64,000 bases of DNA from Selaginella moellendorffii (GCF_000143415.4 NW_003314265.1:386405-450404), one strand, 5' to 3'; positions 9,511-61,916 are shown, counted from the first letter of the stretch. Made by a program: numbers and translations. The notes: generated from the sequence alone by a model not told the origin.

Positions 9511-10624
9511 TGTAAGCGACTAAATTTTCCATTCTACTTTAGTCACTTAACCACACCTCCGACCACTTGGAGGAGTCTCATTCGCAACCTCCATAAGTCC
9601 AACTCAGGACTTGGGGCTTGCTAGCCCCGAGAATGGCATCCATGCCACTCAACCTTAGCACGTGGTCCAAGTGCTCCACGTGTCCGATCCCATGATCGAC
9701 ACCCCAAGGTACCACCGACGTATCGGCCCGTTACGCTAAGGCCATGCCCATTTACCTTGGTCACACTGGTGGTCCAACACCACCTACATTCCAATCCCGT
9801 CTCTCCAAGACTGGGTCATCCGTCCATGAGTGATCATCCCAGATCCACTCCTTAACATCCTTAGGATGCCTACAGACATGGGGAATAGCCTTCCCCAATA
9901 ACTCTGTTCCAGTCCCCACCAAGTCCCTTTCTGTCCTTGGCTGTGTTTGCCAACACTGCCACTGGATCAAGGCCCACCGGCCCAACCACTAAGTCCCACT
10001 ATCCTCTAGGACTTCCTCACCATGTGACCATATCCTTGGTCTCTACATTAGAGGCCTACTCCTCTTCCTTTCCACAGTCTGGGCCTTTGGGACAACATTT
10101 CGGAACACCGTGGCCTTACGCGAGCCACCTGGGTACTCTCCTCGCCTTCTGCCCTTGGGTGCTCTAGCCATGGGCTTAGAGCGGGTTCCGTTGAGCCACA
10201 CCAGGTATCCAAGTAGGTAGTGCCACCCACACTTGGACTGGGAGCATCGGCCAGTCGATCTCCCGGGGGAACTAGAGCCGGCTCTTGAACACTTCACCAA
10301 GCTACCCCGCTTGTCGGTCCGTGTTCACTCTAGTCTTGGACTTCCCAGTGGGCAGCTCATCACCCAACACTGGGTCCGGCCTTCCTGGGCCAAACTGGCC
10401 TTTCCTGGCCAAACTGGCTCCACTGCAGTCCTCCCCCTACTATACTTTTGGAGCTCACCAAACCCCCCAGGGTCTGGGAGACGAACGCTTTGGGCTTTCA
10501 CCCTCTCAGGCTCCGGACTCGGACTCGGACTCGGACTCGGACTCGGACTCGGATTCGGACTCGGACTCGGACTCGGGCTCGGTCTCGGCCTCGGCCTCGG
10601 CCTCGGTCTCGGTCTCGGTCCCGA

Positions 10625-10656
<32 letters not shown>

Positions 10657-11240
10657 CCGGTCTCGGTCCCGGTCTCGGTCTCGACTTCGGACTCCATCTC
10701 GGACTCCATCTAGGACTCCATCTCGGACTCCATCTCGGACTCCATCTCGGGTCCATCTCGGGTCCATCTCGGACTCCATCTCGGACTCTATCTCGGGTCC
10801 ATCTCGGACTCCATCTCGGACTCCATCTTGGGTCCATCTCGGGTCCATCTCGGACTCCATCTCGGACTCCATCTCGGGTCCATCTCGGACTCCATCTCGG
10901 ACTCCATCTCGGACTCCATCTCGGACTCCATCTCGGGTCCATCTCGGACTCCACTTCGGACTCCAACTCGGGTCCATCTCGGACTCCACTTCGGACTCCA
11001 ACTCGAGTCCATCTCGGACACTCCCACGTGTCATGTGTTGGTCCCTTTTTGGAGCCTCACCTTTTGCCCACTTCGTGCTCGTTCCTCGAGCACTTCGTTG
11101 GGAGTTCCACTCCCGCTCTTGACTTTTCAAGTCGGAGCTTTTGGTCCAAACGTGTTACGCTCGTTTGGCTCTCGCTTCGGCCACTACCATGTGGCGCCCT
11201 TCCGGCTCCACTTTGGGGCCTAGGGATTTTGTGTCTCACA
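9511..11240 (-). repeat. 3' LTR of family A (1730 bp) with internal 6-nt and 12-nt tandem arrays
   Basis: TGTAAGCGAC...GTGTCTCACA; (GGACTC)n, (GGTCTC)n and (GGACTCCATCTC)n at ~10515-11015. Confidence 0.93.
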
Positions 11241-11361
11241 ACTCCACCACCCATAGACGAAGTTCGATGTCCTCATCGAACGGTGAACAATTTTATAAAG
11301 TAACACCCACATGTGTTACCATTTCCATCCTTGGCGCGTAGCCAATATTTGTAAATGGTGT

Positions 11362-15380: not shown

Positions 15381-16506
15381 TGTAAGCGACTAAATTTTCC
15401 ATTCTACTTTAGTCACTTAACCACACCTCTGACCACTTGGAGGAGTCTCATTCGCAACCTCCATAAGTCCAACTCAGGACTTGGGGCTTGCTAGCCCCGA
15501 GAATGGCATCCATGCCACTCAACCTTAGCACGTGGTCCAAGTGCTCCACGTGTCCGATCCCATGATCGACACCCCAAGGTACCACCGACGTATCGGCCCG
15601 TTACGCTAAGGCCATACCCATTTACCTTGGTCACACTGGTGGTCCAACACCACCTGCATTCCAATCCCGTCTCTCCAAGACTGGGTCATCCGTCCATGAG
15701 TGATCATCCCAGATCCACTCCTTAACATCCTTAGGATGCCTACAGACATGGGGAATAGCCTTCCCCAATAACTCTGTTCCGGTCCCCACCAAGTCCCTTT
15801 CTGTCCTTGGCTGTGTTTGCCAACACTGCCACTGGATCAAGGCCCACCGGCCCAACCACTAAGTCCCACTATCCTCTAGGACTTCCTCACCATGTGACCA
15901 TATCCTTGGTCTCTACATTAGAGGCCTACTCCTCTTCCTTTCCACAGTCTGGGCCTTTGGGACAACATTTCGGAACACCGTGGCCTTACACGAGCCACCT
16001 GGGTACTCTCCTCGCCTTCTGCCCTTGGGTGCTCTAGCCATGGGCTTAGAGCGGGTTCCGTTGAGCCACACCAGGTATCCAAGTAGGTAGTGCCACCCAC
16101 ACTTGGACTGGGAGCATCGGCCAGTCGATCTCCCGGGGGAACTAGAGCTGGCTCTTGAACACTTCACCAAGCTACCCCGCTTGTCGGTCCGTGTTCACTC
16201 TAGTCTTGGACTTCCCAGTGGGCAGCTCATCACCCAACACTGGGTCCGGCCTTCCTGGGCCAAACTGGCCTTTCCTGGCCAAACTGGCTCCACTGCAGTC
16301 CTCCCCCTACTATACTTTTGGAGCTCACCAAACCCCCCAGGGTCTGGGAGACGAACGCTTTGGGCTTTCACCCTCTCAGGCTCCGGACTCGGACTCGGAC
16401 TCGGACTCGGACTCGGACTCGGATTCGGACTCGGATTCGGGCTCAGGCTCGGTCTCGGCCTCGGCCTCGGTCTCGGCCTCGGCCTCGGTCTCGGTCTCGG
16501 TCCCGA

Positions 16507-16538
<32 letters not shown>

Positions 16539-17202
16539 CCGGTCTCGGTCCCGGTCTCGGTCTCAACTTCGGACTCCATCTCGGACTCCATCTCGGACTC
16601 CATCTCGGACTCCATCTGGGGTCCATCTCGGGTCCATCTCGGACTCCATCTCGGACTCTATCTCGGGTCCATCTCGGACTCCATCTCGGACTCCATCTCG
16701 GGTCCATCTCGGGTCCATCTCGGACTCCATCTCGGACTCCATCTCGGGTCCATCTCGGACTCCATCTCGGACTCCATCTCGGACTCCATCTCGGGTCCAC
16801 CTCGGACTCCATCTCGGACTCCATCTCGGACTCCATCTCGGACTCCATCTCGGGTCCATCTCGGACTCCACTTCGGACTCCAACTCGGGTCCATCTCGGA
16901 CTCCACTTCGGACTCCAACTCGGGTCCATCTCGGACTCCACTTCGGACTCCAACTCGAGTCCATCTCGGACACTCCCACGTGTCATGTGTTGGTCCTTTT
17001 GGGTCCCTTTTTGGAGCCTCGCCTTTTGCTCACTTCGTGCTCGTTCCTCGAGCACTTCGTTGGGAGTTCCACTCCCGCTCTTGACTTTTCAAGTCGGAGC
17101 TTTTGGTCCAAACGTGTTACGCTCGTTTGGCTCTCGCTTCGGCCACTACCATGTGGCGCCCTTCCGGCTCCACTTTGGGGCCTAGGGATTTTGTGTCTCA
17201 CA
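15381..17202 (-). repeat. 5' LTR of family A (1822 bp)
   Basis: Same termini as 9511-11240; differs by a few transitions and by array copy number. Confidence 0.93.
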
Positions 17203-18728
17203 ATGAAGTTCACATGCCTAAGAACTCTACAACTTCCGAATAACACCTTTCTCCAACATTTTTTTGACGTTTGCATGTAAAATCTTGATCTCTTTGAATG
17301 ACCAACAATGAACAAGAACTTTGATTGGATGAACATCCCCAATTAGAATTAGATGACATGTGGCAATCTTGGCCAAGATTGCCACATTCAAAAAAATCAG
17401 AATACTCCTTTATGAACTAGTCAACCACTGTAACACAAAGATTGTTAGAGGGATTGGAAAAGGAAAAAGTAGAATAAGATGGAAATATAAGAAGAAATAG
17501 TGGGGGGATAACAATAATAGAAGTAGAGGTAGAAGTAGAGGGACAAAAAAGTATGAAAATGAGAGGAATAGATGAAATATAAAGAAGTATAAAACAAAGG
17601 GAAAAAGCCTCAAAATCACACTTGGCATGATTGCGCTGCAACCAATCTATACCAAGGATGAGGTCAAAAGTTTGACCCGGCACCACCTACAATGATTGTA
17701 ACCCAAGCTTGAGATCGCCCACATGCACAACCAGGTCCACCTCATCCCGTGCACATGCATGTGTACGGCCGTTACCATAAAGAATGAAAACTAGTTCCAT
17801 TTCAGGATGCAAGTGTAGATAACAATGTGTGGTAATAAGTCGAGCAATAGAAAATAAACTCGATTTTGTATCAACCAACACGAAGAGAATAATAGGAAAC
17901 CTTTTGTTATAAAAACGAGCTTGGAAAATAAACACTTGATGAATCGGTGCCAAATGAACCCCTTGATGACAGAAAGATGGAAGGGTTACTAACTTATTCG
18001 CACAAGGTCCTTCTGTTACTTGTGTGACTCCTTGTTTTCTAGATGAATCTCGGTGTCCAAACCTTTCACTGTAGTAGCACCAACAAAACGTTATTGACGC
18101 CAAAGTCTCCACCCAGGAAATAGAGGTCCCCAATCTGGAAAATGCCGACAACATCGATAAGTGTAACTAACTTCATCACATGCCTAATAGCAAACGTCAT
18201 GGACACGACCACGTCCTCGCCCTTGTCCTTGGACTCAAGCAGCAGCAACATCAACCTCCATTAAAATAGAACTATTGCCTATAGAAAGTGGAATGGATCT
18301 TGATTCAATGATCCATATTTATGTTAGAGTGTTCTCCTAGACATTTTCAAATGCATATTCAGATATGCTGACGATTGTGATAATGTCTTCTAACAATTGC
18401 ATTGTCTTCGTCAAAGGTTATCTAAGTTGGTAATGCAATTTGGTGTTCATTTCCGAAGCCTCTTGCTTCGTGCAGAGCCAAATATGTCGAAGCGGATCAA
18501 GCTAAAAATGTTATAGCCAACACTTCGTCAAAATCTTGTCGGACTTGTGCATAATCACCCTTGACGATACTCTCTGCTTGGCACAACGTTATGAGATGTT
18601 GCATCTTCCACTTCTTGCTGCATATCCTTCCGTTCCTAGAGTACTATGAGACCACAATACAATGCATGTAAATTGATTTCCTTATCATTTTTGGTCCCTC
18701 TAAGATTACTTTTGCTATATGTATGTAA

Positions 18729-22022: not shown

Positions 22023-22508
22023 TCTCGGCTGGAGCAGCGCAAATGCACCGCCACCGGTGGACGCGATCGGCTCCCAGATATCGATCGATCGCGCAAAACC
22101 CTACCCGATCAGCCGCGCGGCGCGCGGCAGCTAGATCCAATCGCCGATTTGCCAGAATCACCTTACGCTGCTAGCGGATCAGCTGCTCTCCATCCCACCA
22201 GAGAATCCCACCGCCTAGCGCATAACCCTCGCTCCATGACGCTACCCGTCCAGGTAGAAACTTTTATTCTGCCATAGCTTTCTTATTTACAAACTCGTCG
22301 CTTCCACCTGGCCGTCCGATCGATTCCATTTAGACATTCTATTTGGGGTATATATCAAGAATATCTTCCTTTCTTTATAAATTAACTGGGATGATTAGTA
22401 TCATCTGACAATACTAAATATTATTTAAGACAAAATGATAAGCTTGTAAAATTTCCTATGCTACATTTTCAGTTTGGAAACACAAGACTCAAGAGAGAGC
22501 TAGTACCT

Positions 22509-23500
<992 letters not shown>

Positions 23501-41495: not shown

Positions 41496-43123
41496 TGTAA
41501 GCGATTAATTTTTCCATTCTACTTTAGTCACTTAACCACACCTCCGACCACTTGAAGGAGTCTCATTCACAACCTCCATAAGTCCGATTCAGGACTTGGG
41601 GCCTACTAGCCCCAAGAGTGGCATCCATGCCACTCAACCTTAGCACTTGGTCCAAGTGCTCCACGTGTCCGATCCCATGATCGACACCCCAAGGTACCAC
41701 CAACATATCAGCCCGTTACACTAGGCCCTGCCCATTCACCTTGGTCACATCGGTGGTTCAACACCACCTACATTGCAATCCTGTCTCTCCAAGACTGGGT
41801 CATCCGTCCATGAGTGGTCATCCTAGATCCACTCCTTAGCATCCTTATGATGACCACAGACATAGGGAACCGCCTTCCCCAATATCTCCTTTCCAGTCCC
41901 CACCAAGTCCCTTCCTGTCCATGGCCGTGTTCACCAACACTGCCATTGGGTCAAGGCCCACAGGCCTGACCACTAAGTCCACTATCCTCTGGGACTTCCT
42001 CACTGTGTGACTGTGTCCTTTGTCACCACACCAGAGGGCTACTCCTCTTCCTTTTCACAGTCTGGGGCATTGGGGCAACATTTCGGAACACCGTGGCCCT
42101 ACACGGGCCTTGTGGGTACTCTCCTCACCTTCTGCTTTTGGGTGCTCTAGCCATGGGCTTAGAGCGAGGTTTCGTTGAACCACACCAGGTATCCAAGTAG
42201 GTAGTGCCACCCACATTTGGACTGGGAGCATCGGCCAGTCGATGTCCCCGGGGAACTAGAGCCGACTCTTGAACACTTCACCAAGCTACCCCGCTTGTCG
42301 GTCCGTATTCACTCTAGTCTTGGACTTCCCAGTGGTCAGCTTATCACCCAACACTGGGTATGGCCTTCCTGGGCCAAATTGGCCTCTCCTGGGCCAAATT
42401 GGCCTTTCCTGGCCAAACTGGCTCCACTGGGCTCCAACCCCCACACTCTCCCTACTATACTTTTGGAACCCCCTGCAGCCCCCCCCCCCCCCCCCTGGGG
42501 GACGATCGCTTTGGGCTTTCACCCAACTGCCTATATTAGTATTTGGACTTGGACTTGGACTCGAACTCGGCCTCGGTTCCGGTTTCGGACTCGGACTCGG
42601 TCTCGGTCTCGGTCTCGGTCCCGGTTCCATCTCGGATCCATCTCGGGTCCATCTCAGACTCCATCTCGGGTCCATCTCAGACTCCATCTCAGACTCCATC
42701 TCGGGTCCATCTCAAACTCCATCTCGGTTCCATCTCGGGTCCATCTCGAACTCCATCTCGAACTCCATCTCGGGTCCATCTCGGACTCCATCTCGGACTC
42801 CATCTCAGGTCCATCTCAGGTCCTTCTCAAGTCCATCTCAGACTCCATCTCGGACTCCACTTCAGACCCCAACTTGGGTCCATCTCAAACACTTCCACAT
42901 GTCATGTGTTGGTCCTTTTTGGGTCCCTCTTTGGAGCCTTGCTTATTGCTCGCTTCATGCTCGTTCCTCGAGCACTTTGTTGGGAGTTCCACTCCCACTC
43001 TTCACCTTTTCAAGTCGGAGCTTTTAGTCCAAACGTGTTACGCTCGTTTGGCTTTCGCTTCAGCCACTACCACATGGCGCCCTTTCGGCTCCACTTTGGG
43101 GCCTAGGGATTTTGTGTCTCACA
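41496..43123 (-). mobile_element. Solo LTR of family A inserted in the 3' LTR of element B
   Basis: Diverged copy of the 9511 LTR, TGTAAGCG..TCTCACA; imperfect TSD CCGGC / CTGGC. Confidence 0.9.
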
Positions 43124-50913: not shown

Positions 50914-51440
50914 AAGCTTTTCTTGTGGCTCGCGGTGTTCTTCAAAGTGGTTTACAAACAGGCCTTCAAATTCTCTGCCTGGACAATATAGTGGCCAGCC
51001 TTATGGACAGCCAGTAAGTTTTCTCTCATAGCTTTTCTTGCTTGCTTTTAGAGTTCCAGATCTTCTCCCTTGCTTTGTAAATCTTGGAACGCTTGTTCAC
51101 TGACTGTGGGTTCTAGATTGGAGTTACTTGTTCTAGAGATTTTTTTCTTTCGCTTTGCGTTGCTAATCACTCCTTTTCTTGTTCCAGCCACAACAATACA
51201 TGGACATGGACGGGAACTACAGGAACTATTAAATCCTTTCACGAAACAAAGGGTAGTTGCTAAGCATGAGGAGTTTTGGATGTAAATAATGTTTTCTTGT
51301 ATCAAAGAAAATTTGTTGTAGATTAGCTAGGCTGATTTAATTCAAGCTAATAGCCTTTAATCCGTTATCGTAACCGTTGATCCTGACTTCGTAAGAGCCC
51401 TAGATCTGACGGCGTGGCATGAAACCCTAGCTCTCTGGCA

Positions 51441-52416
<976 letters not shown>

Positions 52417-53128
52417 AGCTGTCTCGTGTTTCCAAGCTAAATGAATTTTTGCTTTTGACTTTGCGCCTCAAATGTAGCCCTTCCGCGTGAAATGCGGTTC
52501 TGTCAGATTTACCTGCTGAAATATGTATGTAGGGGTGCCCATCGAAAAGCATGAAATGGACTGGGGTTAGAATGGTGCCTTATCAAAAACTTTCTGGCCA
52601 TTTCACACGATCAGCCAGGAGATTTTCCCTCTTTGGCAATTTTGACGGCATTCTTGAGAATCATGGGATAATCCTGGGATGTGAAGACAGACGGTGTAAT
52701 TCTGTGTGGGAACTTGCTAGATATGGCGTGCAATTCGTAAAAGGGTGAGTGTTACTGCGATAGATTTCACTCACAATATTAGTGTCCATGTGGCAGTTTT
52801 CTATTGGTTCGGCATTAAATGTCATTTGGATGCCTCATGGATGCCCCATGGATGCTGGCCGATGGGTCAATGATGTCCCCATAATATGAACAATGTGTTA
52901 CACATAGATGCCACATATCATCAAGTTTGACCCCATGACATGGGGATTCATCAGGTCATAGGGTTTAGGAGACGCTTCCTTGCCTTAGCGCCTTGCTTTA
53001 GTGCTTTGTTATTCGGCATGTTTCTTGGTAGCAGATGTGGAAGGTAACTTGGTTTGTTAGTGAGTGGTTTGAAATGTTTTTGTGGGCAGTGTTGGAAGTG
53101 ACTTTGATTTACTACTCAATTGTTCTCT

Positions 53129-54885
53129 ATGGACTTTCAAGTTCCTACCATGAGTATAATTCTCTCCCTAGTTTACTTCAAATTTGTGTCACTGAAACTT
53201 TTTCTTCCAGGTTTACTGGAAGATGTGGAGGAAGATGAGGTGGATGGCCTTCTATCCAATTTTAGTGATTCGGACTATGGTTCCAGTATGGATAGTGACA
53301 ACGATGCTCTCCCAGAGGTTTGCTTAGTTTCCAGCCTTCTAGATTCATGATTTGCACATTTCTAGGCCTTCTATAATTTTTTGCAATCGAGGGGATTCGG
53401 TAGTCCAGCTGCATTTGGCACTTGGATGCACCTGAAGATCCTCGAGACTAAGACTACTGCTTACCTCGCATGCTATCTTAGAATTTCCAAGCCAACACTG
53501 TACAAATACATGCGGCTTGTCAATCCAAATTGGAGAGGTGTATATTATAGAGTACCACCCGAAGAGGTACTTCATCACGTTCGAACTAACAATGCCATGA
53601 ATCGAGGTGGCACAAACTGGGGGATTATCAATTCCCGATCTAGCTGTAGAACTGGAGGATACCGATTTAGCCGACGCCAAATTCGTGAGGCCTTAGCCAC
53701 TCACGATCCAAGTAGGCTGGAACAGAGGCACATGACAAGGATTCGACGACGGATTTACAGGAATGAGGAGGCTTATGCACTTTGCCATATGGATTGTGAG
53801 TATTCTTTCATTTCTACTTTTTTTTCAGCACATGTGGTAACATGTTTATTGTAGCATATTGCAAGCTCATAAGCTATGGTTTCTATGTACATGCCATTAT
53901 TTGCGGGGCAACTCATTATATTGTAGCTTGCGAGCTAGCTACCTCCAAAGAATCCCATACAATATTTAACACATATGCGCAGACTGTTCGTCGATTTGGA
54001 AGGCCCAAGCGCATCCAGAGCGACAATGCTCCAGAGCACAATGAGGTTGAGAGGGACATGATCCGCTGTTGGGGTCCTGCAGCTAGGAGCTTCATACGTG
54101 GGACATCAACACGTAACCAGGTACTCACAGCGTTAGAGTTTTTCCAAATAAGGACTCATAGGACTAAATCAAATTTGTTTTACAGCGCATAGAGCATTTG
54201 TGGAGAGAGCTCTTTGAGCGCGTGGTGTGGTTTTATAAACACCTTTTTGAGTCCATGGAAGATATAGGAATTCTCGATGTATCTAATCCATGGCACAACC
54301 AAAGTCTACGTTGTGTCTTTGCTCCGTACCTCAAGAAGGATATTTCACACTGGGTTGCAACCTGGAACCTCCATGAGGTCCGTTCGTATCGATGTGGTGA
54401 TTACTTCAGACCATCTCATGTTCCTGCAAACTTATTTCAACCGATGGAACAAGAGCTTGGGTAACAATTTTGGTAATGTTACAGAATTCCTAATAAAATG
54501 TGCTTTTGTAGGATTATGCCGGCTGTTGGTGGAAAAGATATTGAAGACCTTCCCGGACCATTTCTCTCTAATGTCAAAGGTGCAACTTTGTCAGAGGTAA
54601 TCTTTAGAGCAAGAATACAACAATTTCTTTAAATCTATTTTGTTGTGCTTGGCTACCTTATAGGCTCTTGGCACTGTTCGAAACCAGGCATTTTTGATGC
54701 ATCGGGAGGGACTCAACTTAGACGAGCAATATCTACTTCATTTAGATCTAACAATGGAGTGTGCAATGGCTGATGTTGCGGGTGTAGATCTTCCACTTTA
54801 CATCGAGAGTGCCTTGCCTACAGCAACACTAGTGAAGCGACGAGCTTTGGAAAAATTATACTTGGCCATACTCGGAGAAAATTGA
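53129..54885 (+). CDS. Integrase-core (IS3-like) DDE transposase, 7 exons, frame open after splicing
   Basis: RIRRRIY..CHMD|SYCKLISYGFYVHAII; FGRPKRIQSDNAPE; FIRGTSTRNQ|RIEHLWR; WVATWNLHEVR; start exon inferred. Confidence 0.85.
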
Positions 54886-55208
54886 GTGTTCTTTAGTGTA
54901 CATTTCAAATTTAAATTCAATTTTTGATTTGTTCAATTTTAGGGTTCCCACGCTTGGGATTAGGGTTTTCACCAAGTCCCACCCATATTAATTGTGCCTT
55001 GGATACGGGGCAATTTCATTTTATGACATGATTTTGTCGATGGTTCGTTCGGTCTTCCAATCGATTCGTGTCATCTAACCGGAGGCAAGGCTTCTAGTGC
55101 ACACTCCCCCGATCGCAAGACCACCGCCCAAGCGAGAGCGCCATAGCTGCGATGGTGGGTAGCTTCTCCTCGATCAGGTTTGCATAACCAATCCTTTGTG
55201 GTTTCTAG

Positions 55209-58200
55209 GCTCGAAGCAAGAATTCCGCACGCCTCAACAGCAGTAGACACTATGGAAACACCTCGCGAGCACGCAGCCAAGCACTCGATGTTCCGCAATC
55301 GGTACAGCCAACAGTCCCGCGAGACACATGCCAGCCACTTGATCTTCCAAGCTCCGTAGCAGGGACATCAACTCCAACAGCATCCCATCCACAGCTCCCG
55401 ACTGCATTTGAGCAAGCAGAGCGCCGCCTAACATTGCATACATTGCAACATATGCGGAACCTCCAGCATGTTTCATTCTCCTCACCTTCCTTGGAAAGTA
55501 GCAGCCCGAGCATTCGAAATGAGCAAGTCCGGACACCTCATGCCCACGGTGTTGTCCAATCTGGAACGCTGCCACCAACACCAACACCAACTAGAGGACG
55601 TGCTCACGGAATCCTATATAGTGCCACTGCTACCAGCCCCGCAACTCCACCAACCGCTACTACTCTCGCAACTCCATCTACCGATACAAGTGCCAGTACC
55701 TGGCCATCTACCTCCCGAAGCAACAAGCGGTCTAGCTCGGTAAGTTTTTCATTTGTACCCGTTTTTTTTCCATGTGTTTTTCTGTGTAGGGTGAGTTGAC
55801 AATGCCTCCACACCAACGAGCTTATAGTTCCCCATCAACATTCCACAACTACTCCCAAGGATCGACATCATCATCTAGTGGAGCTTCGACATCCAGATAT
55901 GTTCAAGCTGACCCTCAAGGCGGGCTGCCATGTGAGCCACAGGTATAACATGACCCCATGCATTCTTCTTTTTTTTCTTCTTTGGATTTGTTTAACTCAT
56001 TTTTGTTTCACTGTGCTAGACTCTCTCACCGCTTGTGGCTGCAGTGCACACCTATGCCGATAACAATCGGCAGTCCTTATGTTGTCGTCGTGGACGTCGT
56101 GGCAGTCGATCTAAAGTCATTGGTGGGATGTCGTCTACGACACCCTTGGTCCCCCGGCCGTTCACCACAGTTCTTGTCACCAAGTGGATTGCAATCCCAA
56201 AGACTTAGCATATGCACTTATATGGGCGGAAAAGAGAGCCATCTGTGAAGGTGACGGAACTTGACGAGCTGGCAGTGGACCTCCCAGAGTGTCTCATATG
56301 GGGTGGCTTATACTCCAGTATTCCTTTCCAGCCCGGCACAGCCCAACATGCAATTCTACTATCACTCCAAGCCTCGGGAATCCAACCTTCATCCATGACC
56401 AACCCAGGAGCATTTGTCTGGCGTGCAAGGCAGTCCAATGGTGGTGAGGCCCATGCCGAGTCTGCAAAATTTGGCCTCAGCTCTATCCGGCCTTGCTACT
56501 GGCCTCCTCAAACATCATGGGGAGCTATAGCAAACAAGGCCAATGGCAATCGGGCAATAGTTATATATTTATACAATGTTATGGAGCATCTTACTGACAA
56601 ACATTGGCTAAGTTATCAAAAACAGGCCCGAGCACTCGAGGAGAAGGATGTTCGTGAATGTAAGTCATTTTTTTTTTAAGTTCCCTCCTCACAAATATAT
56701 GTTGTGGTCTTTGCAGTTGTAGCTGCTACAAATACCTTGACTGCAAATGATGATCCAAGGCCAGCCACGCAGGAATCAAACCCTTGCGAGAATAATGAAG
56801 AAGAAGACTCTGCGGATGAAGAGGACATTCTTCCATTACCGGTAGAAACTCTCCCCACACAAGACAACATGGACATTAGCGGAGTCGAAGAACAAGGTGA
56901 TGGTGGGGATGAACCGCACCAAGGATCTCCGGAGACATCCTTGTCACCAGAGATAGTGGCTCCAGGCCATGCGGCTGGTAAGAAGCATTAACATAAATGA
57001 ATATTTTCTTCATTTTCTAATTTCTGAGTGCAGATAGGCTAATGGTAGTGTATGACAGTGATGGCGGAGGCCTTGAAGACCATGGTGTGCCTCCACCCCC
57101 CTTTTTAGAGGGAAGTAGCTCCACTCCGTTTACGCTTATGGAGTTGCTTGACAACTTTTCTACAGTAGAGTAAGATAATTGAAAATTGTGCTATTCAAAA
57201 TTGAACTAATGTTTGTATGTAGATTGTTGGAGCGTCAACAAAGATGGATTGATGCCACCAATGCATTTAATGAAGCTGTTCAGTTAACCACTCAGGATAG
57301 TGCCAACTTCATCATGCTGCAGATTGAGGAGGTTTCTGCCTTATAGGATGCCACCACAACCCTTGAGGTGAGGGCACAGAGGGATGCTGAAGTTCTCTCA
57401 CAGGTGCAGTGGCTGAAACACAAGCTTCTTGGTTGCTTTGCCGTGGAGAGCACAAGTGACGAGGAGATGCTAGACGCTATTGCTAGACACCCTGAATTCC
57501 ATTGGGCTGGCGGTGAAATATTTCTGCGGCGCGTGCTTTTCAACCAAGCTATGCCTCATTGGCAAGATTGGGAGAGTCTTCTCCTTAAGCTTGGCCTTTC
57601 AGAAGCACAGTACGAGGATGTGTTTTGTGACAACACAATCCAACAGCTCCTTGCTGAAGTAAGTATTAATGTGCCTCCTTCAATTCTTGAGTCCACAATA
57701 GCATGGTTCATTGAGAAGAGGTACGTGTATCTATTTCTTAGCACTTAGTACCATCTTATGGTTTTGTGCAGGGACCTACGTAGGAATTGGGCGGCTGCAC
57801 AACAATTGAGAGAACTATTTAACACTGCTGAAACACTGTATTGTAAGTTCTCTCGTTTTTGCATCGAGAAGGCCATGCTTCTGCCATACAGACTTGCTCG
57901 TACACGTTTGAGGCCGTCTCGCATTCTGGTAAGCAATGGATTGCCTATGAATTGGAGTTACCTCACTTGTCCTTCTAGATTGCACCAAACAATGAATTCA
58001 GTTGTTTCCAATTCGCCTTCAATACTAATCTCCGCACACCAAATTACAAAGTGGTCTATGCGTCTGAGATTGGAGGAGCTTTGGTGTGGGAGGAATCCAC
58101 AATAGATGCGGGTGGGCCACATGCAAAAGCCATTAGGGAGGCTGTTCGCCAGATTCCAGGATCAGTAAGTCTAATTTTCACTTGGCTCACTAGAGTAATT

Positions 58201-59284
58201 TTGTGTTACAGACGCGTGGACTGTTTGTGCTTAGGGAAGGAGCCACATATTGGCATCCCAGGATGCCAGTGCATTCTAGGACGTTGCGACAAGAAGAGCG
58301 GGATGTGGTAAGTTAAGTTTAAAGCACAAGTTTTATATGCTCCTCACTTTTATATGCACAGGCTATCTTTGTGGGATGGTTGCTATTCCAAGCATTCGAA
58401 TGTAATGCACAGGTTTCTCGCGGGTGTACAATTGCAACATTGGCAATTGCAGCTGGAGAGGTTCCAAACGAGGATGACCGACGACTTGCCCGAGGAGGAC
58501 TATATGAGATGGACCTCAAGGCATGCGCGCCGCATATCTGGAATGCACTCAACCAATTGCGAGGTGCATCAAGCCTAAAGGAGGAGGGCGATCGGCGCAA
58601 GTCTGTGGATTCCATCCTAGAGAACCCTGCAATTACTGACTACAATGCAGTGCTTGAGTCTAGACTCACCGAACTTGGTGAAGGTTATGAGCAAGCTGTG
58701 GAGGCATGCGTGGCTGCAGTGGTTTGGCGTTACCTATTCATCGAGCCAAACGTAGTGGGAGACTTACTCCGAGATGGCTTCCAACACTCAATGCGCACGG
58801 AAGCTCGTCAAAGGCCTTACAAGAGTCCAGCATTGCTAGGTGGGCTTTCACTCATTGGGACAGATGCTTTGTTACAGGTCTTCCGGGTAAGGACGATCAT
58901 TCCTCCTGCGGAGTTCATCAACTGCCTGATCTTTGATCAGGACTTTGGAGAGAACTTCCGCAGCTGGATTGTGGACATCATTCGAGGTAACTATTTACTT
59001 TCACAAACAACTAAAACTCTTGTATGTTTGAACATTTTATAGATATGAGCCCGAAAGAGTTATCCAAGTTCCATCACTTTGCGGTTGATTCTCTAGAGTT
59101 CCGACCGGGAGAGCCTATTTGGATCCAAGTTGAGAGACAGAGTACATCATCTACTCGATTTCCCAGGTTCTCCACATGCACACGAGAAGTTTTCTTCCCT
59201 TTAACATACCCGTCAAAGGAGTGGACCAAACACAAGATCCACCGGGCACTCCAAAATCCAGAGAGCTTGTATGGATTGGGCTGA
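55209..59284 (+). CDS. HECT-domain E3 ubiquitin ligase-like cargo gene, multi-exon, probable single premature stop; true start upstream and unresolved
   Basis: N-lobe IDAGGP; C-lobe ELSKFHHF..RFPRFSTCTREVFFPLTYPSKEWTKHKIHRALQNPESLYGLG*; in-frame TAG at 57344-57346. Confidence 0.75.
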
Positions 59285-59424
59285 TGTTGTGGAAGTAATG
59301 TAGACACTTTCACAATAAAAATAGATAATTGTCTTGAAATATGTTTCACACTTTGAAAGAGACTCTTTCCAGTTCATTGGCAAAGTTAAAGGTAAGAATA
59401 TTCAAAATATTCCACAAATGCCCA

Positions 59425-60012
59425 TTATAGGCACTTGCGGCCCTTGGTACCCTTTTGGCTTATGCTTGTCTCACCAAGGGTAATCACTATAGCTTCCAAA
59501 GCAACTCCCAATTTAGGTTCTGGGTCAAAACTATCGAGCTTGGGTGCTACATGATGCCCATCCTCGCTTGAGGAACTCTCAACCTGTTTGGTAGAACCAA
59601 AATCACCCTCTGGGTCTGTGAACTCGTCCTCGCTTGCATCTCGAGCAGTAACATATCCCTCGCTGTCGCTTTCTTCAGCTGGACCTTTCCCCTCGGTGAT
59701 TGGCACAAGATTAGTAGTCTTGGGCTGCCTTGTCAAAGGGATTGTCGAGCCTTGAGAGGAGGAGGCATCATATAGAATCCTCGGTCCTGTCCCCTGTTGG
59801 ATCCATTGTTGTGCCTCAAAGAAGTCATAAAATCCTCTCCAGTTTGCCATGCCAGGAGGAAACCCAGAAACCTCAAACATTGCAAAAGGGTTACACCATA
59901 TAGGAAACTATTACAAATCTACTCTTACCAAAGTGAGCACGAGCTTCTAATCCCTGAAAACTCCAGTCCTTCGGCCGCAGTGCACGGCATACATTGGATA
60001 GTTTTGCCCCAT
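59425..60012 (-). pseudogene. RNase H1 N-terminal hybrid-binding domain (Cauli_VI-like) protein with acidic tail, one stop
   Basis: MYAVHCGRRTGVFRD*KLVLTL|VSGFPPGMANWRGFYDFFEAQQWI; TAG at 59947-59949 replaces the conserved Trp. Confidence 0.72.
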
Positions 60013-60057
60013 GCTTGGAAACCCTTTTTACAAATTTCAAAATTTGAAACGGTTATG

Positions 60058-60310
60058 ATTGGAAAATATTGGAAGTGTCCATTGTCATTGCTCTTCTCAC
60101 CTAAATGTTACTACATGCAATTGCAACTTCCATATTCTCAAATCTCCTTCAGCATGCTCCTCTTGAGAGAACTCCAGGTCCAATTTGAAACAATTATAAT
60201 TGGAAAATGTTGAAAGTGTCTATTGTTATCCTGAATGTTACTACATGCAATTACAACTTCCACATTCTCAAATTTCCTTTAGCATGCTCCTCTTGAGAGA
60301 ACTCTAGGTC
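60058..60310. repeat. ~140-bp imperfect tandem duplication inside the transposon
   Basis: ATTGGAAAAT..AATGTTACTACATGCAATT..CTCTTGAGAGAACTC occurs twice. Confidence 0.8.
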
Positions 60311-61916
60311 TAAACATCAACACTATGCACCTTTGCATAGTACACAATTGAAGTATGAGCCCCACCAATTCATCGAATTGGTTAGACTTCAACCTACTTT
60401 TGAGTCATATGCAAATCTTCTAAGCATCATGTTACAAAACTCAAGTGTTGAGAGAGCTACACTGGAAATCAATTGCAACGAAAGATAAACTCAATGGGAT
60501 CTATTAAAGACATGACTCCAGATAGTATATATCCATGGCTTTGCAATGGAGCTAGATGGAGTTCACTTACGTTTGTTATGAACACTATGTTAAAAGAGGT
60601 GTGCCCAGGTGTGACTCAATTTCCAACATTTTCCAGCTATGAGAGCCCAGGAGTTCTTCACGTCCATAGTGAATACACCTCAAGAATCACAATGCAAGAC
60701 AGAGGAAGCAAGAGGATTCAACGATTGCCTAGACGCTGTGGCGGGTAACAATGGGAGCATCAATGATTGCGAGCAGCACAGCGGCGGTCGGCAATGTGGG
60801 GAGGACACGGCGATGGCTGTTGATGACGATCAAGGCTGCCATACTCCCAAATTCTAGATGGAGTTCACTTACGCTTGCTATGACACTATGTTAAAAAAGG
60901 CATGCAATTTGTAAATGCATTGCAACGAAAGATAAACTCTTGCCATGAGCGCCAAGAGCAAGACGTGAGAACATAGTGCTCTAGATAAGGTAGTATGGTA
61001 TGCAATTTAGTCGATTGTCCATTTGGTTTGCAACATTAACAACTTGCTCAAATGCATGGGATGAATGGGTCTATGGGCCATGAATGGCTCCATTCCATAC
61101 ATAGCATGGGTCATTGCTATGGGCATGATGCCCCATCCGGGGCATAAGGATTGGATATTCGTAAAATATTCTATGCCTGTGTTTTTTTCACACTCATAAT
61201 ACACGTGGACCAATAGCAAGCATACACGTGGTGTGAGTAAAATCCACCGTTGTAAAATCCACCCTTTTACGAATTGCACGCCATACTAGATGGAAGTTCA
61301 CTACAATCTTCCCAGAATTTAATTTCTCGTGTATATTTTGTTTAAATTGTAAACATTAAGTTAAAGATTTCAGTTTATCCTCAGAAATAAATAAGCAAAC
61401 TCTAATATTTATTTTATTTGTATTCCTATTTTTCATTAAAAATATAAATACTGAAGAAAATATTAAATTAGTGTTTTAAAATAAAATTATAAGCATAAAT
61501 AGAAATATCCATTAACCCAAAAAAGCCTTAGTTTTTAGCTTTTGCAGTCTAGATTGAAATCAATTTGACGGCTATCAAAATTTGATTATGTTAATTTTAA
61601 TGTATGGCTGTTAATATTAATATACAACATTGTAGCTTTATACTTAGACCTTATAACTTTTAATAAAATAATTGCACAAAATGAAAAAGTTTATAATTTA
61701 TAAAGACAAGATTAATATCAAGATTAAATATCAAAATATAAAAAAGAGACCGTGGGAAATATTCTTAGAATATTCTATGGTTATCATGATTTTCTTAGCT
61801 TTAAATAGAGCCAGAGAATCCTTGTGCTTTCTTCCCTGATATGGAGTTCAGAGAACAAGAGTAAAGAAAGACGAGTCACACTACAAATTTTGGAGGATGG
61901 ATCGTGATATCTTACA

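What the first reader, a model, noticed from the sequence alone, without database searches (positions are those of the whole stretch)
52722..61285. Complete IS3EU-like DNA transposon in a land plant, with three genes
Seen: perfect 26-bp TIRs (TAT..ATA), a 5-bp TSD, CCCCAT-type subterminal repeats and a spliced transposase with an open frame and the D(HMD)-D(SDN)-E(RIE) triad. Established, from recall: IS3EU elements have TAY..RTA ends and 6-bp TSDs and are described mainly from animals and fungi. Inference: a young plant lineage with a 5-bp TSD that carries a ubiquitin ligase and a hybrid-binding protein. This is the strongest candidate novel system in the window.
Basis: partly seen in the sequence, partly recalled or inferred. 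Interest (0 to 1): 0.88.

Follow-up and report, generated by a model that had tools for sequence, protein, structure and literature searches.

The report
GingerRoot/IS3EU transposon copy in Selaginella
This is a structurally complete but decaying copy of a GingerRoot/IS3EU DNA transposon in a Selaginella clubmoss, a superfamily already described in that genus; it makes 5-bp rather than 6-bp target duplications, and its ubiquitin-ligase-like second gene looks like a widespread partner of this transposase family rather than plant-specific cargo.

Summary
An 8,564-bp element (52722-61285) has perfect 26-bp TIRs (TATGG..CCATA), a 5-bp TSD (CTAGA), CCCAT/ATGGG clusters near both ends, and an intact six-exon, 481-aa DDE transposase (D199, D256, E291).

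The transposase core is 54% identical to the published GingerRoot SL_GR-020 of Selaginella lepidophylla, and GingerRoot has since been merged with IS3EU. So "IS3EU in a land plant" is already known.

Six more copies lie in the S. moellendorffii assembly (five full-length copies are 91-98% identical). Every copy with both ends intact, this one included, has a perfect 5-bp TSD (five in all). The 5-bp TSD is therefore a real departure from the usual 6 bp.

This copy is the least decayed, but it is not pristine:
- It has 64 private substitutions, 70% of them C>T/G>A.
- R254Q sits two residues before catalytic D256.
- There is one nonsense codon in the HECT-like gene and one in the hybrid-binding-domain gene.

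The HECT-like gene is probably not lineage-specific cargo. HECT genes sit beside rva_4 transposase genes in a green alga, a whitefly and a sea cucumber, and HECT-like ORFs do so in 15 of 27 metagenomic loci. I found no paper describing this link.

The parts
52717..52721 (.). Left target-site duplication, CTAGA
   Evidence: The 5-bp length is supported by four other copies.
52722..52775 (+). Left terminal inverted repeat: perfect for 26 bp (52722-52747), 85% over 54 nt. Begins TATGGC.
   Evidence: The same TATGGC terminus is found in a basidiomycete element in L012.
52844..52945 (.). Left subterminal cluster of CCCAT/ATGGG motifs (5 copies); candidate transposase-binding sites
53150..54885 (+). 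Transposase gene, 481 aa, intact. Exons: 53150-53317, 53366-53795, 53855-54120, 54186-54460, 54512-54596, 54664-54885. HTH at about 53450-53515. D199 = 53792-53794, D256 = 54022-54024, E291 = 54192-54194.
   Evidence: Pfam rva_4 (PF24764) scores 52.8 and 53.1 bits on two exons.
55209..59284 (+). HECT-like gene, 10 exons: 55209-55739, 56332-56659, 56717-56977, 57034-57169, 57223-57720, 57772-57928, 57979-58164, 58212-58307, 58362-58986, 59043-59284. The start is uncertain; the first in-frame ATG is at 55452. One in-frame TAG at 57344-57346. IDAGGP motif at 58102. Putative catalytic Cys at 59177-59179.
59425..60012 (-). Small gene of 176 codons in 2 exons (60012-59929, 59871-59425). It has an N-terminal RNase H1-type hybrid-binding domain (Pfam Cauli_VI) and an acidic, Ser-rich tail. 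In-frame TAG at 59947-59949, at the conserved Trp.
61056..61136 (.). Right subterminal cluster of CCCAT/ATGGG motifs (6 copies)
61232..61285 (-). Right terminal inverted repeat: perfect for 26 bp (61260-61285). Ends CCATA.
61286..61290 (.). Right target-site duplication, CTAGA

Best explanation

Shown here:
- The ends, the TSD, the gene structures and the other copies.
- The state of decay of each copy.
- The domain matches.
- The linkage between transposase and HECT genes in other organisms.

Inferred mechanism:
- The 481-aa transposase has an N-terminal helix-turn-helix and an integrase/IS3-like DDE core (D199, D256, E291).
- It recognises the TATGG.. inverted repeats and the CCCAT subterminal repeats.
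- It moves the element and joins it to target DNA cut with a 5-bp stagger, which leaves the 5-bp duplication.

Two further genes travel with the transposase.
- A very divergent HECT-type ubiquitin-ligase-like protein. HECT genes sit next to this transposase family in green algae, insects, echinoderms and many metagenomic contigs. I infer it is an old accessory gene, perhaps ubiquitinating a host silencing, chromatin or repair factor, or the transposase itself.
- A small protein with an RNase H1-type RNA:DNA-hybrid/dsRNA-binding domain. I infer it is a helper, possibly against RNA-directed silencing. So far it is seen only in Selaginella.

This copy is the least damaged of the seven examined, but it is most likely an inactive relic under C-to-T mutational decay.
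For: Superfamily:
- Pfam rva_4 outscores rve on the core exons.
- The core (aa 195-300) is 54% identical to published GingerRoot SL_GR-020, 44% to SL_GR-005 and 33% to the Acropora GingerRoot sequences. It shares the blocks HMDSY.KL, R.D and NQRIE.
- The termini TATGG..CCATA match the TAYGG..CCRTA reported for IS3EU (PMC12730594) and the TATGGC ends of a basidiomycete element.

Host:
- The nearest proteins are all from S. moellendorffii.
- Six other copies lie in GCA_000143415.2; the five full-length ones are 91-98% identical.
- A flanking thaumatin gene is 94% identical to S. moellendorffii P21.

TSD: five of five copies with intact ends have a perfect 5-bp duplication.

Decay:
- There are 64 private substitutions in 7,786 aligned sites, 70% of them C>T/G>A.
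- Private changes in the transposase are 11 non-synonymous to 6 synonymous, and include R254Q.
- The accessory genes carry Q460* and W22*. The residue changed by R254Q is invariant Arg in 15 diverse relatives.

Hybrid-binding domain: Pfam Cauli_VI scores 27.7 bits against a cutoff of 21, covering the whole domain.

HECT:
- Pfam matches the C-lobe at 21.4-23.3 bits.
- The Cys aligns with the stretch of HUWE1 that holds its catalytic Cys (that assignment is from prior knowledge).
- A C-lobe profile built from transposase-adjacent ORFs picks out the last exon of this gene, and no other ORF in the 64 kb, at E=1.6e-4.

Linkage:
- PF00632 genes lie 2.4-5 kb from rva_4 genes in Coccomyxa, Bemisia and Apostichopus.
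- 15 of 27 metagenomic loci of 6 kb or more have a HECT-like ORF, mostly tail-to-tail just downstream of the transposase. Two of these ORFs pass Pfam's HECT cutoff.
Against: - The TSD is 5 bp, not the 6 bp given for GingerRoot and 'usually' for IS3EU. The TIRs are 26-54 bp, not 100-150 bp.
- The HECT assignment for the Selaginella protein rests on the C-lobe only, just below Pfam's cutoff. The PDB sequence search was not significant (E=1.2), hhalign against the Bemisia HECT was not significant, and the AlphaFold model failed (pLDDT 30).
- HECT neighbours in other taxa were not shown to lie inside the same TIR-bounded element. Two fungal loci (L012, L013) showed no HECT gene.
- No tree with labelled Repbase references or outgroups was built.
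- No transcript or activity data are available.
- dN/dS of 0.45-0.8 among copies is only weak evidence of selection on any of the three genes.
Confidence: 0.85

Rival explanations
1. This is a young, currently active autonomous element: an intact three-gene unit able to move itself now.
For: - The TIRs (26 bp) and the TSD are perfect.
- It is the only one of six full-length copies with an uninterrupted transposase frame.
- It has the fewest private substitutions, 0.82%.
Against: - It still carries 64 private substitutions with a deamination spectrum.
- Private changes in the transposase run at a near-neutral 11 non-synonymous to 6 synonymous.
- R254Q hits a position that is invariant Arg, two residues before the catalytic D256.
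- Both accessory genes carry a nonsense codon that the other copies lack.
- No two examined copies are closer than about 98%.
Confidence: 0.12
2. The HECT-like and hybrid-binding-domain genes are host genes captured recently by a Selaginella-specific lineage, that is, true cargo rather than ancestral accessory genes.
For: - GingerRoot elements are known to pick up host gene fragments (PMC6839031).
- Fungal IS3EU elements carry other cargo, TET/JBP and alpha-kinase genes (PMC12730594).
- The hybrid-binding-domain gene was not found in the six more distant loci searched.
- The Selaginella HECT-like protein has no significant direct similarity to the animal or algal neighbours beyond the tip of the C-lobe.
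Against: - HECT genes lie beside the transposase gene in three distant taxa, and HECT-like ORFs do so in 15 of 27 metagenomic loci.
- In the tree, the transposases with HECT neighbours fall in three separate clades, on both sides of the midpoint root.
- The only homologues found for the Selaginella protein were other copies of the same element, not a host parent gene.
- Both genes are complete multi-exon genes present in all six full-length copies.
Confidence: 0.2
3. The element belongs to a different integrase-bearing group, such as Ginger1, Ginger2/TDD, Polinton or a derivative of an LTR retrotransposon. The 5-bp TSD is typical of LTR elements.
For: - The 5-bp TSD.
- Pfam rve also matches.
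- GingerRoot's first-published best Repbase match was Ginger2 (PMC6839031).
Against: - The ends are inverted, not direct, repeats.
- Pfam showed no RT, gag, protease, HHCC zinc finger or chromodomain.
- rva_4 clearly outscores rve.
- The core is 54% identical to a published GingerRoot sequence.
- The termini are TA..TA, not TG..CA.
Confidence: 0.03

Closest known systems
GingerRoot elements of Selaginella lepidophylla (Cerbin et al. 2019, PMC6839031)
   Same: - Same genus.
- Same transposase family: 54% identity over the DDE core to SL_GR-020.
- TA..TA termini.
- Element size of about 8.6-8.9 kb, against 8.56 kb here.
- Multi-copy family at 92-99.9% identity.
   Different: - The TSD is 5 bp here against 6 bp.
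- The TIRs are 26 bp perfect (54 nt at 85%) against 100-150 bp.
- The published description does not mention HECT-like or hybrid-binding-domain genes. 'HECT' and 'ubiquitin' do not occur in its main text.
IS3EU superfamily of Repbase (animals and fungi; Kojima and Bao 2023, PMC10045372; Kojima 2025, PMC12730594)
   Same: - DDE core blocks WH.D..KL, R.D and NQRIE.
- Termini TAYGG..CCRTA.
- HTH-type N-terminus without an HHCC zinc finger.
- Multi-gene elements.
   Different: - The TSD is 'usually 6 bp' there.
- The cargo described in fungi is a TET/JBP dioxygenase plus an alpha-kinase, not a HECT gene plus a hybrid-binding-domain gene.
- The Selaginella family has Cys in place of the otherwise invariant Asp of the IDG.SR block.
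Bacterial IS3 family insertion sequences
   Same: - Related DDE transposase fold.
- TSD length varies between subgroups (3, 4 or 5 bp; IS2 gives 5 bp, from the Figure S1 labels), so a 5-bp variant is in keeping with the wider family.
   Different: - IS3 elements end TG..CA, are about 1.2-1.5 kb, have frameshifted orfAB and carry no accessory eukaryotic genes.
- This element has introns, is 8.6 kb long and ends TA..TA.
HECT-domain E3 ubiquitin ligases (Pfam PF00632; for example the HUWE1 C-lobe, PDB 6fyh)
   Same: - A C-terminal segment with Cys about 35 residues from the end aligns with the stretch of the HECT C-lobe that holds the catalytic Cys.
- An IDAGGP motif sits where the HECT N-lobe begins.
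- The region is about 350 aa long.
   Different: - The match is below Pfam's cutoff, and neither Pfam nor PDB searches recognise the N-lobe.
- No ligase activity or fold has been shown.
- The gene is encoded inside a transposon.
RNase H1 N-terminal hybrid-binding domain / caulimovirus P6 (Pfam Cauli_VI, PF01693)
   Same: Full-length match to the 44-residue domain, above the cutoff.
   Different: - No RNase H catalytic domain follows, only an acidic, Ser-rich tail.
- In this copy the conserved Trp codon is a stop.

Membership tests
IS3EU/GingerRoot superfamily | DDE transposase of the IS3-like/rva_4 type with the blocks WH.D..KL, R.D and NQRIE | tested here: met
   - Pfam rva_4 scores 52.8 and 53.1 bits on two exons.
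- The core is 54% identical to published SL_GR-020 and 33% to the Acropora GingerRoot sequences.
- D199, D256 and E291 are in place.
IS3EU/GingerRoot superfamily | Termini 5'-TA..TA-3' (TAYGG..CCRTA) | tested here: met
   TATGG..CCATA in the window and in the other copies whose ends are intact.
IS3EU/GingerRoot superfamily | 6-bp target-site duplication | tested here: not met
   - The TSD is 5 bp in five of five copies with intact ends: CTAGA, TTTTT, GAGAG, GCTCA and GAATG. The sixth base never matches.
- The literature says 'usually 6 bp' (PMC10045372), so this is a variant rather than an exclusion.
IS3EU/GingerRoot superfamily | Monophyly with reference IS3EU/GingerRoot transposases, separate from Ginger1/2, Polinton, LTR integrases and IS3/IS481 | tested here: inconclusive
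   - Only pairwise identity to published cores and a tree of unlabelled rva_4 relatives were obtained.
- In that tree the window protein groups with Coccomyxa (SH-aLRT 97, long branches).
- Repbase references and outgroups could not be loaded.
GingerRoot as described in S. lepidophylla | TIRs of 100-150 bp | tested here: not met
   - The TIR is perfect for 26 bp and 85% over 54 nt.
- Beyond that, only the CCCAT motif clusters are shared by the two ends.
IS3EU/GingerRoot (against Ginger1 and LTR integrases) | No HHCC zinc finger, GPY/F or chromodomain; HTH-type N-terminus | tested here: met
   Pfam finds only a weak HTH_17 match plus rva_4/rve on the transposase exons, with no zinc-finger or chromodomain match.
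HECT E3 ubiquitin ligases | HECT domain (PF00632) above the curated cutoff, covering both the N- and C-lobes | tested here: inconclusive
   - Only the C-lobe matches (profile positions 213-301 of 306), at 21.4-23.3 bits against a cutoff of 23.9.
- A profile built from transposase-linked C-lobes hits the last exon at E=1.6e-4.
- An IDAGGP motif was seen by eye at the start of the N-lobe.
HECT E3 ubiquitin ligases | Catalytic Cys about 35 residues from the C-terminus, in a HECT fold | tested here: inconclusive
   - The Cys (59177-59179) aligns with the stretch of HUWE1 that holds its catalytic Cys, but at E=1.2.
- The AlphaFold2 model was unusable (pLDDT 29.8), so no fold search was run.
RNase H1-type hybrid-binding domain (Cauli_VI) | Match to PF01693 above the cutoff over the whole domain | tested here: met
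   - 27.7 bits against a cutoff of 21, profile positions 2-44 of 44, with X placed at the stop.
- The other copies have Trp at that position.
LTR retrotransposon or solo integrase derivative | Direct long terminal repeats, TG..CA ends, RT/gag | tested here: not met
   - The terminal repeats are inverted.
- Self-BLAST shows no direct repeat flanking the unit.
- No RT or gag domains were found.

The most novel reading that the evidence does not exclude
A divergent HECT-type ubiquitin-ligase gene is an ancient, conserved second gene of IS3EU/GingerRoot transposons across green plants, green algae and animals. These would then be two-component elements in which a transposon-encoded E3 ligase is needed for transposition or for evading host silencing. 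In addition, the Selaginella lineage has shifted the integration stagger from 6 to 5 bp and added an RNA:DNA-hybrid-binding protein. I found no paper describing the HECT link. One recent paper states that IS3EU structure and function are largely unexplored (PMC11934779).
Probability: 0.45. Interest if true: 0.65.

Novelty: new variant of a known kind. Interest (0 to 1): 0.45.

Why it matters
As first stated, an IS3EU-like transposon new to land plants, the finding does not stand: GingerRoot was described in Selaginella in 2019.

Three points remain useful:
1. This is a clean, multi-copy demonstration that an IS3EU/GingerRoot family can make 5-bp rather than 6-bp target duplications. That matters for how these elements are annotated and for how the transposase measures its stagger.
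2. It gives a full exon-level description of a three-gene GingerRoot element.
3. It gives a testable lead: HECT-like ubiquitin ligases travel with this transposase superfamily in very distant eukaryotes. A transposon-encoded E3 ligase would be an unusual accessory function for a DNA transposon and a possible counter-silencing device.

Tried and rejected
- The AlphaFold2 model of the HECT-like C-terminal 418 aa, built on a shallow alignment of Selaginella paralogues, gave pLDDT 29.8. No fold search was made.
- PDB sequence searches found nothing with the whole P0151 or with its profile. With the last 148 aa, the only relevant match was to the HUWE1 C-lobe, and it was not significant.
- hhalign of the Selaginella profile against the Bemisia HECT protein was not significant.
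- An HMM of the Selaginella protein found no convincing ORF in the distant loci.
- The word-based homology search on the HECT part returned only S. moellendorffii copies. The search with the Bemisia HECT exon returned only itself.
- No TIRs could be found around the Coccomyxa or Bemisia transposase+HECT pairs. In Bemisia and Apostichopus the HECT gene runs off the fetched locus. So whether both genes lie within one element there is unproven.
- The flanks of the window element show no BLAST similarity to the element or to other copies, so it is not a nested insertion.
- dN/dS among copies (0.45-0.8) and the comparison of exon with non-exon divergence gave no clear signal of selection.
- The 6-bp TSD reading (CTAGAT) was considered and rejected, because it needs asymmetric ends and fails in all the other copies.
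- An endogenous pararetrovirus reading, prompted by the Cauli_VI domain, was rejected because there is no RT or capsid.
- Nothing in the window or in the fetched loci was taken to be human, a toxin or effector gene, or an animal or crop virus.
Full report

Yes.

- The 26-mer TATGGCGTGCAATTCGTAAAAGGGTG occurs exactly twice in the window, at 52722-52747 (+) and 61260-61285 (-). None is expected by chance.
- The inverted repeat extends to 54 nt at 85%.
- The flanks read GCTAGA|TATGG... and ...CCATA|CTAGATGG. This gives a 5-bp duplication, CTAGA.
- A 6-bp repeat (CTAGAT) exists only if the first T of the TIR is counted, which would make the ends asymmetric.
- CCCAT/ATGGG motifs occur five and six times between 100 and 235 bp from the two ends. 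These are the only two places in the 64 kb that reach five per 135 bp, against a background of 0.22. The clusters are kept in the other copies.

**2. Gene models**

Transposase (+):
- Six exons, all with GT-AG introns: 53150-53317, 53366-53795, 53855-54120, 54186-54460, 54512-54596 and 54664-54885.
- They give an uninterrupted 481-aa protein.
- It has a weak HTH match, and Pfam rva_4 (PF24764) scores 52.8 and 53.1 bits on the two core exons. Pfam rve is weaker at 34 bits.
- The catalytic residues are D199 (HMD), D256 (SDN) and E291 (RIE), spaced D-56-D-34-E.

Gene 2 (+):
- Ten exons between 55209 and 59284, guided by the S. moellendorffii models P0151 to P0153.
- The frame is open except for one TAG at 57344-57346.
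- The start is uncertain; the first in-frame ATG is at 55452.

Gene 3 (-):
- Two exons, 60012-59929 and 59871-59425, 176 codons.
- There is one TAG at 59947-59949.

**3. Whose genome is it, and are there other copies?**

- An exhaustive HMMER search with the core exon found its only close relatives (78-89% identity) in Selaginella moellendorffii.
- Fetching the loci of those proteins gave six more copies in GCA_000143415.2:
  - L007: 97.9% identical to the window element.
  - L006: 97.7%.
  - L004: 95.9%.
  - L001: 94.7%, with the right end truncated.
  - L003: 90.8%, with a 1.9-kb insertion.
  - L002: an internally deleted and rearranged copy.
- A flanking thaumatin gene is 94% identical to S. 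moellendorffii P21. Other flanking genes, a GT8 glycosyltransferase and a CCCH zinc-finger protein, are plant-like.
- The host is therefore S. moellendorffii or a very close relative. Nothing here is human, viral or a toxin gene.

**4. TSD length**

- Every copy with both ends intact has a perfect 5-bp TSD, and the sixth base never matches:
  - window: CTAGA
  - L004: TTTTT
  - L002: GAGAG
  - L006: GCTCA
  - L007: GAATG

- The old copy L003 has four of five bases matching.
- The 5-bp TSD is therefore a property of the family, not an accident of this copy.

**5. What superfamily?**

- IS3EU has TA..TA ends and 'usually 6 bp' TSDs. It forms one lineage, with 99% bootstrap, with GingerRoot (PMC10045372).
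- GingerRoot was discovered in the clubmoss S. lepidophylla and is also present in bryophytes. Its published features are a 6-bp TSD, TA..TA ends, TIRs of 100-150 bp and elements of 3.9-12.9 kb, averaging about 8.6-8.9 kb (PMC6839031).
- Fungal IS3EU elements end TAYGG..CCRTA (PMC12730594).
- The published core alignment lets the window protein be compared directly. Residues 195-300 are:
  - 54% identical to SL_GR-020,
  - 44% identical to SL_GR-005,
  - 33% identical to the Acropora GingerRoot sequences.
- All three catalytic blocks line up.
- A basidiomycete relative (L012) is bounded by TIRs that begin TATGGC, like this one.
- Named relatives are from Bemisia, Apostichopus, a jellyfish, chytrids, basidiomycetes and the green alga Coccomyxa. 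This is the distribution described for IS3EU/GingerRoot.
- In a quick maximum-likelihood tree of 45 relatives, the window protein groups with Coccomyxa (SH-aLRT 97, long branches).
- Membership is therefore well supported, apart from the TSD length and the TIR length.

**6. State of this copy**

Among the six full-length copies, only the window's transposase frame is uninterrupted. The others have 2-18 stops or frameshifts. Even so, the window copy is decaying:

- It has 64 private substitutions in 7,786 aligned sites (0.82%). Of these, 70% are C>T or G>A. The same spectrum dominates in every copy (70-89%), as expected from deamination of methylated cytosines.
- Private codon changes in the transposase are 11 non-synonymous to 6 synonymous, which is roughly neutral.
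- One of them is R254Q, two residues before D256. That position is Arg in all published cores and invariant in 15 diverse relatives.
- Gene 2 has Q460* and gene 3 has W22*. The other copies read CAG and TGG at those positions.
- dN/dS between copies is 0.45-0.8 for all three genes, and exons are no better conserved than non-exons.

This fits a family whose copies have mostly drifted since insertion.

**7. The accessory genes**

Gene 3:
- Its N-terminus matches the whole RNase H1 N-terminal hybrid-binding domain (Pfam Cauli_VI) at 27.7 bits against a cutoff of 21. The query had X at the stop.
- The stop replaces the conserved Trp.
- The rest of the protein is an acidic, Ser-rich tail.

Gene 2:
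- It matches Pfam HECT only over the C-lobe (profile positions 213-301 of 306), at 21.4-23.3 bits against a cutoff of 23.9.
- UniRef names the S. moellendorffii paralogue P0151 a 'HECT domain-containing protein'.
- Its Cys aligns with the stretch of the HUWE1 C-lobe that holds the catalytic Cys, but at E=1.2.
- An IDAGGP motif sits where the HECT N-lobe should start.
- The structure prediction failed.

**8. The HECT gene is linked to this transposase far beyond Selaginella**

In annotated genomes, the gene next to the rva_4 transposase gene carries PF00632 in three distant taxa:
- Coccomyxa subellipsoidea: 2.4 kb upstream, same strand.
- Bemisia tabaci: 5 kb downstream, opposite strand. The protein, P0158, scores 43.8 bits on HECT.
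- Apostichopus japonicus: 5 kb downstream, opposite strand.

Two fungal loci showed no HECT gene.

A scan of metagenomic contigs with a profile of 15 transposases returned 80 loci.
- Of the 27 loci that are 6 kb or longer, 15 contain ORFs recovered by iterated searches seeded with HECT exons that pass Pfam's cutoff.
- These ORFs usually lie tail-to-tail 0.2-3 kb downstream of the transposase.
- Two of these ORFs pass Pfam's HECT cutoff on their own (L048 at 29.8 bits, L081 at 39.1 bits).
- The C-lobe profile built in this way hits exactly one ORF among all six-frame ORFs of the 64-kb window: the last exon of gene 2, at E=1.6e-4.

Because HECT genes make up a tiny fraction of any genome, this repeated adjacency is very unlikely to be chance.

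What is not shown is that the HECT gene lies inside the same TIR-bounded element in those organisms.

I found no paper that links HECT with IS3EU or GingerRoot. One recent paper notes that IS3EU structure and function are largely unexplored.

**9. Mechanism**

- Shown: the anatomy, the 5-bp duplication, multiple dispersed copies, and the DDE triad.
- Inferred from the integrase/IS3 family: the transposase binds the TIRs and the CCCAT repeats, and inserts the element at a 5-bp staggered cut. Whether it moves by cut-and-paste or by copy-out-paste-in, as bacterial IS3 does, cannot be told from sequence.
- Inferred with low certainty: the HECT-like protein ubiquitinates a host silencing, chromatin or repair factor, or the transposase itself. 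The hybrid-binding-domain protein binds RNA:DNA hybrids or dsRNA, for targeting or to blunt RNA-directed silencing. The heavy C>T decay of all copies shows that the host does silence these elements.

**10. Verdict**

- The element is a member of a known superfamily, already reported in this plant genus.
- It has a variant TSD length and a three-gene content that has not been described in print.
- The most interesting lead is the widespread linkage between transposase and HECT genes.

Noticed in passing
window 61286-61302, compared with 60549-60564 and 60855-60870: The reconstructed empty-site sequence CTAGATGGAAGTTCACT (TSD plus right flank) matches 16 of 17 bases of an internal motif, CTAGATGGAGTTCACT, which occurs twice inside the element's duplicated 3' region. 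No longer similarity was detected. It is either chance or a hint of target preference.
   Followed up: partly
window 60041-60313 and about 60470-60940: There are internal tandem duplications in the non-coding 3' part of the element. A 318-bp segment (about 60605-60937) is present in the younger copies (window, L004, L006) but absent from the older L001 and L003.
   Followed up: partly
window 32500-32791 (+): An isolated fragment of eukaryotic large-subunit rRNA (Rfam RF02543, 119 bits, model positions 2419-2818 only) lies inside a low-GC block at 24-38 kb.
   Followed up: no
window 9511-11241, 15381-17203, 41496-43123: There are three copies (83-97% identical) of another repeat with an internal short-period tandem array and long overlapping ORFs on both strands. 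Pfam finds no match.
   Followed up: no
window 22507-23478 and 51437-52418: A 984-bp inverted repeat pair (96% identical) has one arm ending about 300 bp to the left of the element. It is not part of the element.
   Followed up: no
L005 10110-10768 and 18824-19326: This is a second, much more divergent GingerRoot-type transposase family in S. moellendorffii (45-62% aa identity). It is riddled with stops and split by an insertion of about 8 kb. No HECT-like gene was detected nearby.
   Followed up: partly
window transposase residue about 216 (about 53890-53900), and all S. moellendorffii copies: The otherwise invariant Asp of the IDG.SR block is Cys (IICGATHY) in this whole family and Tyr in the L005 family. 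The S. lepidophylla sequences SL_GR-020 and SL_GR-005 keep Asp. The family still transposed, so either the residue is dispensable or the copies were mobilised in trans.
   Followed up: partly
L012 5520-5560 and 14797: The basidiomycete (Ephemerocybe) IS3EU element has about 31-bp TIRs that begin TATGGCACGAATA. At its left end, another element's terminus abuts it tail-to-head, separated only by CC. The element holds three genes, two of them without any Pfam match.
   Followed up: partly
L003 5979-6004 and 19108-19133: Two right ends of the element are followed by the identical flank CAAACAAAATTG. This suggests a duplication of the locus together with the element's end.
   Followed up: no
L009 18621-19682: In Bemisia, the last 35 codons of the HECT gene (the tip of the C-lobe) are repeated four more times, at intervals of about 314 bp, just beyond the gene.
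   Followed up: no
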